A stretch of 63,452 nucleotides of DNA, filler included, from Octopus bimaculoides (lineage: Eukaryota): NCBI RefSeq assembly GCF_001194135.2. It is 7 parts of 7 records of this genome, joined end to end, with 100 filler letters (N's around TTAATTAATTAA, not from the genome) between each part and the next. Parts side by side here need not be neighbours in the genome. Positions count along the whole stretch, not along the records: positions 54,000 to 61,767 come from NC_068982.1; 6 more parts are not named here. One strand, given 5' to 3'. Positions 54,902-55,185 of this stretch are shown here, one piece after another. The notes below the pieces were generated by a model. It was not told where the DNA came from, searched no databases, and was given only the letters and a program-made list of their open reading frames with translations. Both the position numbers and the translations under genes were made by a program. The first letter of the stretch is position 1, and every line of letters begins with the position of its first letter.

Positions 54902-55185
54902 AGTAGTTGTATGCTGTCAACTTAATGTGACAGTCCCCTGAAGGGAATAATACTACTGTTGGTTAGACCTAGGAAGCTGCACTGACGATGACGAGCAAAG
55001 ATTCAGAAACATGTCTCTGGATGCAGGCTTAGCTGGGTGGAAGTGGTTGTCTCCCCCTTGTAAACATAAGGACACAGGAAATGTGTCAAAGCAGATAGGA
55101 AGCGGTGCAGCTTCCTAGGTCTAACCAACAGTAGTATTATTCCCTTCAGGGGACTGTCACATTAAGTTGACAGCATACAACTACT
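54902..55185. mobile_element. Perfect 81-bp inverted repeats around a 122-bp core with a hammerhead-like motif
   Basis: 54902-54982 is the exact reverse complement of 55105-55185; CTGACGA at 54982-54988, GAAACATGTC at 55006-55015. Confidence 0.85.

What the first reader, a model, noticed from the sequence alone, without database searches (positions are those of the whole stretch)
54902..55185. Perfect 81-bp inverted repeat with a hammerhead-like core at its inner edge, 674 nt into a GPCR intron
Seen: the arms have no mismatches. The last base of the left arm is C3 of CTGACGA (54982-54988), followed by helix II TGA/TCA, GAAA (55006-55009), palindromic helix III ACATGT and a GTC triplet (55013-55015). 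TGCAG at 55022-55026 is complementary to CTGCA just before the core, but it is 6 nt out of register, and the in-register pairing is only 4 of 5 with wobbles. Established: Penelope elements have hammerhead-bearing pseudo-LTRs that can be inverted, and retrozymes are small non-autonomous hammerhead elements. Inference: a young IR-bounded, ribozyme-bearing non-autonomous element. The right arm could sequester helix I as a conformational switch. The GPCR pre-mRNA carries the antisense of the core but still forms the 81-bp stem, a candidate ADAR substrate. A plain TA-flanked MITE (TA|GTTG...CAAC|TA) is the alternative.
Basis: partly seen in the sequence, partly recalled or inferred. Interest (0 to 1): 0.7.

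Follow-up and report, generated by a model that had tools for sequence, protein, structure and literature searches.

The report
Inverted retroposon ends, no hammerhead ribozyme
The perfect 81-bp inverted repeat is real, but it looks like two opposite-facing copies of one mobile element's tail inside a receptor-gene intron, and the "hammerhead ribozyme" beside it fails every structural test and is most likely a by-product of the insertion junction.

Summary
Arms 54902-54982 and 55105-55185 are 81 nt and 100% complementary, with a 122-nt spacer, and lie 674 nt into the intron after a class C GPCR exon.

The ribozyme reading does not hold:
- No Rfam hammerhead family matches, even at E<=10 on a 101-nt slice.
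- Helix II is 3 bp (U-A, G-C, A-U), without the conserved G10.1-C11.1 pair.
- In-register helix I is unstable; the whole hammerhead fold scores +7.9 kcal/mol against an MFE of -11.8.
- A competing 7-bp hairpin (55001-55022) buries G12/A13 and the cleavage site.
- Only one core exists in the piece, so it cannot act as a dimer in cis.

New finding: ACGATGA flanks exactly an 83-nt unit (54902-54984), which is the reverse complement of 55103-55185 with one CpG-to-TpG difference. The left arm therefore looks like a separate 5'-truncated insertion with a 7-bp target-site duplication. The box CTGACGA is created at that junction. TATTTCCAG (54829 and 55185) may bound a longer right-hand copy.

Best reading: two tail-out copies of one retroposon's 3' end. 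A TA-flanked MITE remains possible. Interest is low.

The parts
54829..54837 (+). TATTTCCAG, putative upstream target-site duplication of the longer (right-hand) retroposon copy. An imperfect match extends over 54823-54846 (20/24).
   Evidence: This 9-mer occurs only twice in the piece, here and at 55185. The 24-nt, 83% match was found (D11). Estimated chance is about 2e-3. This is an inferred boundary.
54838..54894 (+). Putative 5' part of the longer copy, or host intron if the 9-mer match is chance. Contains the 10-bp palindrome 54862-54882.
   Evidence: Inference from the flanking 9-mers. The palindrome is (I4). No other copy is available to test the boundary.
54895..54901 (+). ACGATGA, copy 1 of the 7-bp direct repeat that abuts the outer end of the left arm.
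   Evidence: D5. The background rate for a non-low-complexity 7-mer flanking a segment is 8.4e-5 per position and length.
54902..54984 (-). Left arm: an 83-nt, 5'-truncated, inverted copy of the element's 3' end (81 nt perfect, plus TG where CG is expected).
   Evidence: 100% over 81 nt. One search shows the T/G mismatch at a CpG (54983 against 55104). It is bracketed exactly by ACGATGA.
54985..54991 (+). ACGATGA, copy 2 of the 7-bp direct repeat, abutting the inner end of the left arm.
   Evidence: Together with 54982-84 it makes the box C|TG|ACGA.
54982..55015 (+). Judged non-functional.
   Evidence: no Rfam hammerhead at E<=10. (+7.9 kcal/mol; helix II pair probability 0.001). (fails helix II >= 4 bp and G10.1-C11.1).
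55001..55022 (+). Competing 7-bp hairpin AUUCAGA/UCUGGAU with an 8-nt loop. It sequesters G12, A13 and the nucleotides 3' of the supposed cleavage site.
   Evidence: I2. (-6.2 kcal/mol; pair probabilities about 0.6).
54992..55102 (+). Unique middle of the longer copy. Includes a 41-nt block (55076-55116, running 14 nt into the right arm) resembling the abundant SINE-like repeat of this piece, and the 5' strand (55096-55103) of an 8-bp local hairpin.
   Evidence: 76-78% over about 40 nt. Only 3 of 1000 shuffles reach the score. A longer gapped alignment is not significant.
55103..55185 (+). Right arm: the 3'-terminal 83 nt of the longer copy. It carries the stem-loop CUGUCA-N8-UGACAG (55154-55173) and ends in ACTACT.
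   Evidence: The fold shows the stem-loop. The tail was read directly. Calling it 'the 3' end of a retroposon' is inference.
55185..55193 (+). TATTTCCAG, putative downstream target-site duplication of the longer copy.
55859..55968 (-). Class C GPCR exon (TM3 region). The intron that holds the element starts at 55858.

Best explanation
The 284-bp structure is not a ribozyme-bearing unit. It is two copies of the 3'-terminal ~83 nt of one young retroposon family, lying tail-outwards in opposite orientations in a GPCR intron.

The right arm (55103-55185, + strand) is the end of a longer, 5'-truncated copy. That copy runs back at least to 54992 and probably to about 54838, and may be bounded by TATTTCCAG.

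The left arm (54902-54984, - strand) is a severely 5'-truncated 83-nt copy of the same family. It was inserted by target-primed reverse transcription into the first copy, duplicating 7 bp of target (ACGATGA).

Before that insertion the local sequence read ...GATACGATGACGAGC..., that is AUGACGA. The hammerhead box CUGACGA, and its adjacency to 'helix I' (CUGCA), were created by the junction.

The only likely molecular consequence is an 81-83 bp perfect intramolecular duplex in whichever strand is transcribed. That would make it a possible ADAR or Dicer substrate in the pre-mRNA.

Shown: the repeat, the two pairs of flanking direct repeats, and the failure of the hammerhead fold. Inferred: retroposition as the mechanism, the family, and any RNA editing.
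For: - ACGATGA occurs immediately outside (54895-54901) and immediately inside (54985-54991) an 83-nt unit that equals the reverse complement of 55103-55185 with one CpG-to-TpG change. The empirical background for such a flanking 7-mer is 8.4e-5 per position, roughly 5e-4 after allowing for both arms and small offsets.
- TATTTCCAG occurs only at 54829 and at 55185, the exact outer end of the right arm. The sequence it bounds has no terminal inverted repeat of its own, as expected of a retroposon.
- Both outer ends of the repeat are the same terminus (...CAACTACT). That terminus has a stem-loop plus a short ACT repeat, the same layout as the SINE-like repeats in this piece, which have a stem-loop plus (TGA)n.
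- A 41-nt block upstream of and overlapping the start of the right arm resembles that SINE, in the same orientation and at a similar distance from the tail (3 of 1000 shuffles).
- The hammerhead tests are negative.
- Literature: retroelement insertions with an adjacent inverted 5'-truncated copy are well documented (PMC8557442).
Against: - No second copy of the family could be obtained, so termini, target-site duplications and family are inferred from one locus.
- The 9-mer 'duplication' is modestly significant only (about 2e-3). Its 24-nt extension has 4 mismatches and overlaps the arm's last 7 nt.
- The similarity to the SINE is short, and a longer alignment is not significant.
- Two independent insertions of one family within about 100 nt is a priori rare, unless the family targets its own sequence or the locus was noticed because it is rare.
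- The palindromic AGTACT context is also what a TA-targeting DNA transposon would leave.
Confidence: 0.5

Rival explanations
1. An ordinary non-autonomous DNA transposon (MITE or foldback type) of 276-284 bp, with ~80-bp perfect terminal inverted repeats. It would have inserted at a TA in an AGTACT context and been mobilised by a Tc1/mariner-like transposase.
For: Long perfect terminal repeats, small size, a unique AT-rich interior and no ORF. TA sits on both sides if the repeats are taken to start at GTTG. A palindromic target context is typical of TA-targeting transposases (general knowledge).
Against: The 'TA' is inside the perfect repeat, so it carries little weight. The model does not explain ACGATGA bracketing the left arm alone, nor TATTTCCAG at 54829 and 55185. 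The termini (GTTGTATG...) do not resemble the CAGT-type ends I recall for Tc1/mariner (memory, not tested).
Confidence: 0.2
2. A single insertion event of a Penelope-like or similar retroelement whose enzyme primes reverse transcription from both cut DNA strands. This would give a direct 5'-truncated copy plus an adjacent inverted 5'-truncated copy in one step. The hammerhead-like string would be a decayed or truncated remnant of the family's min-hammerhead.
For: The tail-out inverted architecture is described as typical of PLE insertions (PMC8557442). A PLE protein cleaves and extends both strands in vitro (PMC11167929). Identical arms follow naturally from one event. PLE hammerheads have a short palindromic helix III like ACAUGU (PMC4209133). 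The 64 nt between 54838 and 54901 could be a one-sided 'tail'.
Against: There is no RT or GIY-YIG coding sequence and no ORF over 120 aa in the piece. The core lacks the long helix II, the unpaired base after A9 and the G10.1-C11.1 pair of PLE min-hammerheads (PMC4209133). The internal ACGATGA repeat is unexplained by a single event. The 'tail' would be 64 nt, not 30-40.
Confidence: 0.12
3. A local, DNA-level inverted duplication. During replication or break repair, 83 nt lying 113 nt downstream were copied in reverse orientation into a staggered break (template switching or templated insertion). No mobile element is involved.
For: Source and copy are only about 120 nt apart and nearly identical. 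A discrete insertion is bounded by a short duplication.
Against: There is no microhomology at either switch point on inspection. It does not explain why the copied segment ends exactly where TATTTCCAG begins. The retroposon-like tail and the SINE similarity would be coincidences.
Confidence: 0.08
4. One reading: a non-autonomous element that carries a working (perhaps dimeric or trans-acting) type I hammerhead. Its helix I strand would be sequestered or released by the right arm.
For: All 11 core nucleotides are present in the right order and spacing, with a palindromic helix III as in min-hammerheads (PMC4209133). A descriptor this loose hits only 1.4% of shuffles of this 6.7-kb piece.
Against: - No Rfam hammerhead hit at E<=10.
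- Helix II is 3 bp, with U10.1-A11.1.
- The in-register fold is +7.9 kcal/mol, and the out-of-register fold only -2.4, against an MFE of -11.8.
- The competing hairpin has a pair probability of about 0.6.
- The region's fold z-score is +0.51.
- There is a single core on both strands of the piece, so no dimer in cis.
- No tandem repeats.
- In the full transcript the 81-bp stem (-190 kcal/mol) permanently locks the helix I strand.
- The core box spans an apparent insertion junction.
- About two such chance motifs are expected per Mb.
Confidence: 0.04
5. An assembly artefact: a chimeric or fold-back join in a gapped draft assembly.
For: The piece is a draft with N runs and at least one suspicious 100% duplicate next to a gap (61090-61382 and 61475-61767).
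Against: The repeat sits in 2.3 kb of gap-free sequence. The arms are shorter than typical reads. The spacer is unique and non-palindromic. The arms have clean, biologically sensible flanking duplications.
Confidence: 0.03

Closest known systems
Inverted pairs of retroposon copies in introns or UTRs (e.g. inverted Alu pairs in primates)
   Same: Two copies of one retroposon lie in opposite orientation a short distance apart within a transcribed intron. They form a long intramolecular dsRNA, the classic substrate for promiscuous ADAR editing (general knowledge).
   Different: Here one copy is only 83 nt and is nested in the other. The arms are identical rather than 10-15% diverged. The family is unidentified, and editing is untested.
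Penelope-like element insertions with an adjacent inverted 5'-truncated copy (PMC8557442; PMC11167929)
   Same: Tail-out inverted repeats made of 3'-end copies, heavy 5' truncation, a possible one-sided extra 'tail', and a hammerhead-like string with a palindromic helix III.
   Different: No RT/GIY-YIG sequence and no pLTR tandem. The hammerhead string lacks the family's helix II features. An internal 7-bp duplication points to two events.
Min-hammerhead ribozymes of metazoan PLEs (PMC4209133)
   Same: The CUGANGA...GAAA...UH boxes and palindromic positions 15.2-16.2.
   Different: Helix II is 3 bp, not 6-8. There is no unpaired nucleotide between 9 and 10.1. The closing pair is U-A instead of G10.1-C11.1. 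Helix I is not stable, and there is no second motif nearby for dimer formation.
Metazoan non-LTR retrozymes (PMC7229834)
   Same: Small (about 170-400 nt), low-GC, non-coding repeat.
   Different: Retrozymes are head-to-tail tandem repeats, each with a canonical type I hammerhead and loop-loop contacts. This locus is a single inverted structure with no tandem repeat.
Tc1/mariner-type MITEs and foldback elements
   Same: Size, long perfect inverted termini, and a TA in a palindromic context at both ends.
   Different: A direct repeat brackets one arm only. A second direct repeat lies 64 nt outside the left arm. The transposase-type termini have not been recognised.

Membership tests
Hammerhead ribozyme (type I, canonical or minimal) | Conserved core boxes C3U4G5A6N7G8A9 ... 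G12A13A14 ... U16.1H17 in the right order | tested here: met
   54982-54988, 55006-55008 and 55014-55015. The bare regex is expected 0.87 times per shuffle.
Hammerhead ribozyme (type I, canonical or minimal) | Helix II of at least 4 bp (6-8 bp in PLE min-HHRs), closed by G10.1-C11.1 | tested here: not met
   Only U-A, G-C and A-U, with an 11-nt loop. It scores +1.6 kcal/mol with pair probability 0.001. The descriptor with helix II >= 4 or G-C closure finds nothing. The trait is defined in PMC4209133.
Hammerhead ribozyme (type I, canonical or minimal) | Helix I of 4-6 bp, in register with the cleavage site | tested here: not met
   In register the pairs are U-A, C.C, U.G, G.U and G-C, scoring +8.3 kcal/mol. 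The 5-bp CUGCA/UGCAG pairing is 6 nt out of register. In the full transcript the 5' strand is locked in the 81-bp stem.
Hammerhead ribozyme (type I, canonical or minimal) | Helix III, or a palindromic 15.2-16.2 plus a second motif nearby so that a dimer can form | tested here: not met
   ACAUGU is palindromic, but its 2-nt loop cannot close in a monomer. Only one core exists on either strand of the 7.7-kb piece.
Hammerhead ribozyme (type I, canonical or minimal) | Match to curated covariance models (Rfam hammerhead families) | tested here: not met
   No hammerhead family at E<=10 in the 7.7-kb piece or in a 101-nt slice.
Hammerhead ribozyme (type I, canonical or minimal) | Covariation in the helices across copies; self-cleavage | not testable with these tools
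   No other copy was retrievable.
Metazoan non-LTR retrozyme | Head-to-tail tandem repeats of 150-450 bp, each with a type I hammerhead (PMC7229834) | tested here: not met
   No tandem repeat at or around the locus; a single core only.
Penelope-like element (full or pLTR fragment) | RT plus GIY-YIG ORF, or similarity to a PLE pLTR | tested here: inconclusive
   No ORF over 120 aa without gaps. Pfam on one minus-strand frame gave only 7tm_3. No PLE consensus was available for a DNA comparison.
Penelope-like element (full or pLTR fragment) | Insertion architecture: a 5'-truncated copy with an adjacent inverted 5'-truncated copy, and an optional tail | tested here: met
   The arms are the same 3' terminus facing outwards, 83 nt and at least 200 nt long. 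The architecture is described in PMC8557442. This feature is not exclusive to PLEs.
Tc1/mariner-type MITE | Terminal inverted repeats at the exact ends, flanked by a duplicated TA | tested here: inconclusive
   TA is present on both sides of GTTG...CAAC, but lies inside the perfect repeat AGTA...TACT. It cannot be told apart from repeat sequence without an empty site.
Tc1/mariner-type MITE | Many genomic copies of uniform length that carry both termini | not testable with these tools
There is no second copy in the piece.
Non-LTR retroposon (LINE/SINE) copies inserted by target-primed reverse transcription | Common 3' end, variable 5' truncation, no terminal repeats, variable-length target-site duplications | tested here: met
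   The 83-nt unit is bracketed by ACGATGA. The longer unit is bracketed by TATTTCCAG. Both share the terminus ...CAACTACT. This rests on one locus only.

The most novel reading that the evidence does not exclude
The locus is a non-autonomous derivative of a Penelope-like element, made in one double-primed insertion. Its divergent hammerhead (3-bp helix II, palindromic helix III) is active only as an intermolecular dimer with transcripts of sister copies. The long inverted repeat would act to keep it off in cis.
Probability: 0.04. Interest if true: 0.55.

Novelty: new member of a known kind. Interest (0 to 1): 0.13.

Why it matters
The practical lesson is for scanning. A full set of hammerhead core nucleotides is expected about twice per megabase by chance, and here an insertion junction manufactures one. 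Core strings should therefore be accepted only with helices, covariance models or multiple copies.

The locus itself is an ordinary consequence of nested mobile-element insertion. Its only plausible biological effect is a long perfect dsRNA hairpin in a receptor-gene intron. That could attract RNA editing or small-RNA processing, a modest and testable point if the host is an animal with heavy A-to-I editing.

Tried and rejected
There was no read-level check of the assembly, no RNA evidence and no paralogous reads.
Both gave no hits.
- Ten ORFs of the piece are not in the collection, so the look-up of encoding contigs had nothing to work on.
- Exact scans with two 22-mers of the arm found nothing in metagenome contigs, viral contigs or prokaryotic genomes.
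- Full-text searches for arm and SINE strings found nothing.
- ARAGORN found no tRNA-like head.
- BLAST of 54700-55400 against the piece found no second copy.
- A long gapped alignment of the element to the SINE was not significant (53 of 1000 shuffles). Only the short block is.
One frame was pasted with X at the stops; the others were not run.
- I considered hAT (8 bp), Mutator (9 bp) and PIF (3 bp) duplications around the whole repeat, and rejected them because no matching flanks or termini exist.
- Twin priming was rejected because it does not duplicate the 3' terminus.
- The Rfam miRNA-like hits elsewhere in the piece are microsatellite or repeat hairpins far below gathering scores.

Full report
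**What is there**

The piece (54000-61767; 6731 called bases, the rest N) contains a perfect inverted repeat. Its arms are 54902-54982 and 55105-55185, 81 nt each and 100% complementary, with 122 nt between them. Either strand folds into the long stem: -189.9 kcal/mol (z = -23) and -182.6 kcal/mol (z = -22).

On the minus strand, an exon at 55859-55968 has AG and GT borders. It encodes ...CLLVPWFREVGFTIVYGVLLLKMYR and matches Pfam 7tm_3, the class C GPCR family (E = 7e-7 for 37 residues, below the whole-domain cut-off because it is a fragment). The intron starts at 55858, so the element's right end is the 674th intron base.

**Is the hammerhead real?**

- Covariance models say no. No Rfam hammerhead family appears at E<=10, either in the 7.7-kb piece or in a 101-nt slice where the filters are most permissive.
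- The core regex CTGANGA-N(6-30)-GAAA-N(2-20)-TH is expected 0.87 times per shuffle (39 of 100 shuffles have at least one).
It hits 1.4% of 1000 shuffles of the piece, about two chance sites per megabase. Requiring helix II >= 4 bp, a G10.1-C11.1 closing pair, or 5 of 5 in helix I removes the site.
- Energetically the in-register hammerhead fold is +7.9 kcal/mol, helix II alone is +1.6, and the out-of-register version (CUGCA/UGCAG) is -2.4. The 65-nt region's MFE is -11.8.
- The MFE contains a competing 7-bp hairpin (55001-55007 with 55016-55022; -6.2 kcal/mol; pair probabilities about 0.6). It buries G12, A13 and the bases 3' of the supposed cleavage site. The helix II pair probability is 0.001.
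- The region is no more structured than its shuffles (z = +0.51).
- ACAUGU cannot close as a monomer, because the loop would be 2 nt. It could only work as a dimer, as in minimal hammerheads, but there is a single core on both strands of the piece and no tandem repeat.

The paper that defined Penelope min-hammerheads lists four emergent traits: long helix II, an unpaired base between A9 and 10.1, a conserved G10.1-C11.1 pair, and palindromic positions 15.2-16.2 (PMC4209133). This site has only the last. Metazoan retrozymes are tandem 150-450-bp repeats, each with a canonical type I motif (PMC7229834). That architecture is absent.

**What the flanks say**

A fine-grained repeat search shows that ACGATGA occurs at 54895-54901, touching the outer end of the left arm. 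It occurs again at 54985-54991, two bases inside the perfect arm.

Those two bases (TG) face CG at 55103-55104. The repeat is therefore really 83 nt, with one T/G difference at a CpG. So ACGATGA brackets exactly an 83-nt unit that is the reverse complement of 55103-55185.

In this piece, a non-low-complexity 7-mer repeats across a segment in this way at 8.4e-5 per position and length. That is roughly 5e-4 after allowing for two arms and small offsets. This is the signature of a discrete insertion with a 7-bp target-site duplication.

Removing the insertion gives ...GTGATACGATGACGAGCAAAG..., in which the 'core box' reads AUGACGA. The C3 and U4-G5 of CUGACGA, and its adjacency to the CUGCA 'helix I' strand, come from the inserted arm. 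The hammerhead string is therefore best seen as a junction by-product.

A second pair of direct repeats exists. TATTTCCAG is found only at 54829 and at 55185, the last base of the right arm. The match extends imperfectly to 20 of 24. The 347 bp it bounds has no terminal inverted repeat of its own.

Both outer ends of the big repeat are the same terminus...GACUGUCACAUUAAGUUGACAGCAUACAACUACU. This is a 6-bp stem-loop followed by a short ACT repeat. The abundant SINE-like repeat in the same piece has the same layout: a stem-loop CCAUGCUAGCAUGG followed by (UGA)n.

A 41-nt block at 55076-55116, running into the start of the right arm, is 76-78% identical to that SINE, in the same orientation and at a similar distance from the tail. 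Only 3 of 1000 shuffles reach its score. A longer gapped alignment is not significant, so I treat this similarity as suggestive only.

TAGGAAGC at 55096-55103 forms an 8-bp hairpin with the start of the right arm (I8). The short copy begins in the loop of that hairpin.

**Most likely history and mechanism**

1. A 5'-truncated retroposon copy (at least 200 nt, perhaps about 257 nt) was inserted in the + orientation, ending at 55184/55185.
2. Later, an 83-nt, severely 5'-truncated copy of the same young family was inserted by target-primed reverse transcription in the opposite orientation, 113 nt upstream of the first copy's last 83 nt. This duplicated ACGATGA.

The arms differ at most at one CpG. 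Both are therefore young, or the short copy derives from the long one.

A one-step variant is also possible. Penelope-like enzymes cleave and extend both target strands (PMC11167929), and PLE insertions typically carry an adjacent inverted 5'-truncated copy and a one-sided tail (PMC8557442). That variant leaves the internal ACGATGA repeat unexplained, and the piece shows no PLE coding sequence.

A TA-targeting MITE remains a serious rival. However, its 'TA' is inside the perfect repeat (AGTA...TACT), and it explains neither pair of direct repeats. A DNA-level templated inverted duplication and an assembly artefact are less likely still.

**Function**

There is no evidence for any selected function. 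Whichever strand is transcribed will carry an 81-83-bp perfect duplex. From general knowledge of ADAR and Dicer, this is long enough for promiscuous editing or dicing.

The 'conformational switch' has no ribozyme to control. In the sense transcript the 81-bp stem would lock the helix I strand permanently.

**Limits**

The protein collection holds nothing from this genome's exon, SINE or ORFs. Exact scans of metagenome, viral and prokaryotic contigs were empty.

The family's identity, the true termini and the copy number are therefore inferred from one locus.

My impression is that the repeat landscape is cephalopod-like. This is recollection, not a test. If it is right, a recent octopus repeat annotation reports recently active LINE, SINE, Penelope, Tc1/mariner and MITE families (PMC13282606). 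All the rival classes are then available in such a genome.

**Verdict**

The inverted repeat is real, and is most probably two tail-out copies of one retroposon's 3' end. The hammerhead is not supported. Novelty and interest are low.

Noticed in passing
window 61090-61382 and 61475-61767: Two 293-nt direct copies are 100% identical and 385 nt apart, separated by a short N run (about 61465-61474). This looks like a gap-closing or scaffolding duplicate rather than a biological tandem repeat (D4).
   Followed up: no
window 54379-54700, 61263-61464, 61648-61767 (sense on the minus strand); 61155-61195 and 61540-61580 inverted: An abundant SINE-like repeat with a 3' stem-loop CCATGCTAGCATGG and a (TGA)n tail. 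Its inverted partial copies make 41-nt hairpins that Rfam scores as MIR842/mir-598-like, far below gathering thresholds.
   Followed up: partly
window 55401-55620 (+) and 59756-59831 (inverted): A second repeat family with a tRNA-like head (GGTTAGAGTGTTAGACTCACAATC...). The two copies are 75% complementary over 76 nt (I4). ARAGORN calls no tRNA here.
   Followed up: no
window 60063-60284 and 60283-60505: A roughly 220-nt tandem duplication at 84-86% identity (D9 and D12).
   Followed up: no
window 54862-54882: A perfect 10-bp palindrome, TAAATCTCTC-A-GAGAGATTTA, lies 20 nt left of the left arm (I4). Its significance is unknown.
   Followed up: no
window 55096-55117: TAGGAAGC-GGTGCA-GCTTCCTA forms an 8-bp hairpin that straddles the inner boundary of the right arm. 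The short inverted copy starts inside its loop, which may mark where reverse transcription stopped (I8).
   Followed up: partly
window 57579-57876: The 149-nt 'inverted repeat' reported there consists of an N run flanked by (TA)n and (GA)n microsatellites. It is not a real feature (I1 and I2).
   Followed up: yes
window 55859-55968 (minus strand) and 56056-56200: The class C GPCR exon (TM3) is preceded upstream by a (GGT)n/(ACC)n low-complexity stretch and then an ~800-nt assembly gap (56372-57170). Neighbouring exons of the receptor may be hidden in the gap.
   Followed up: partly
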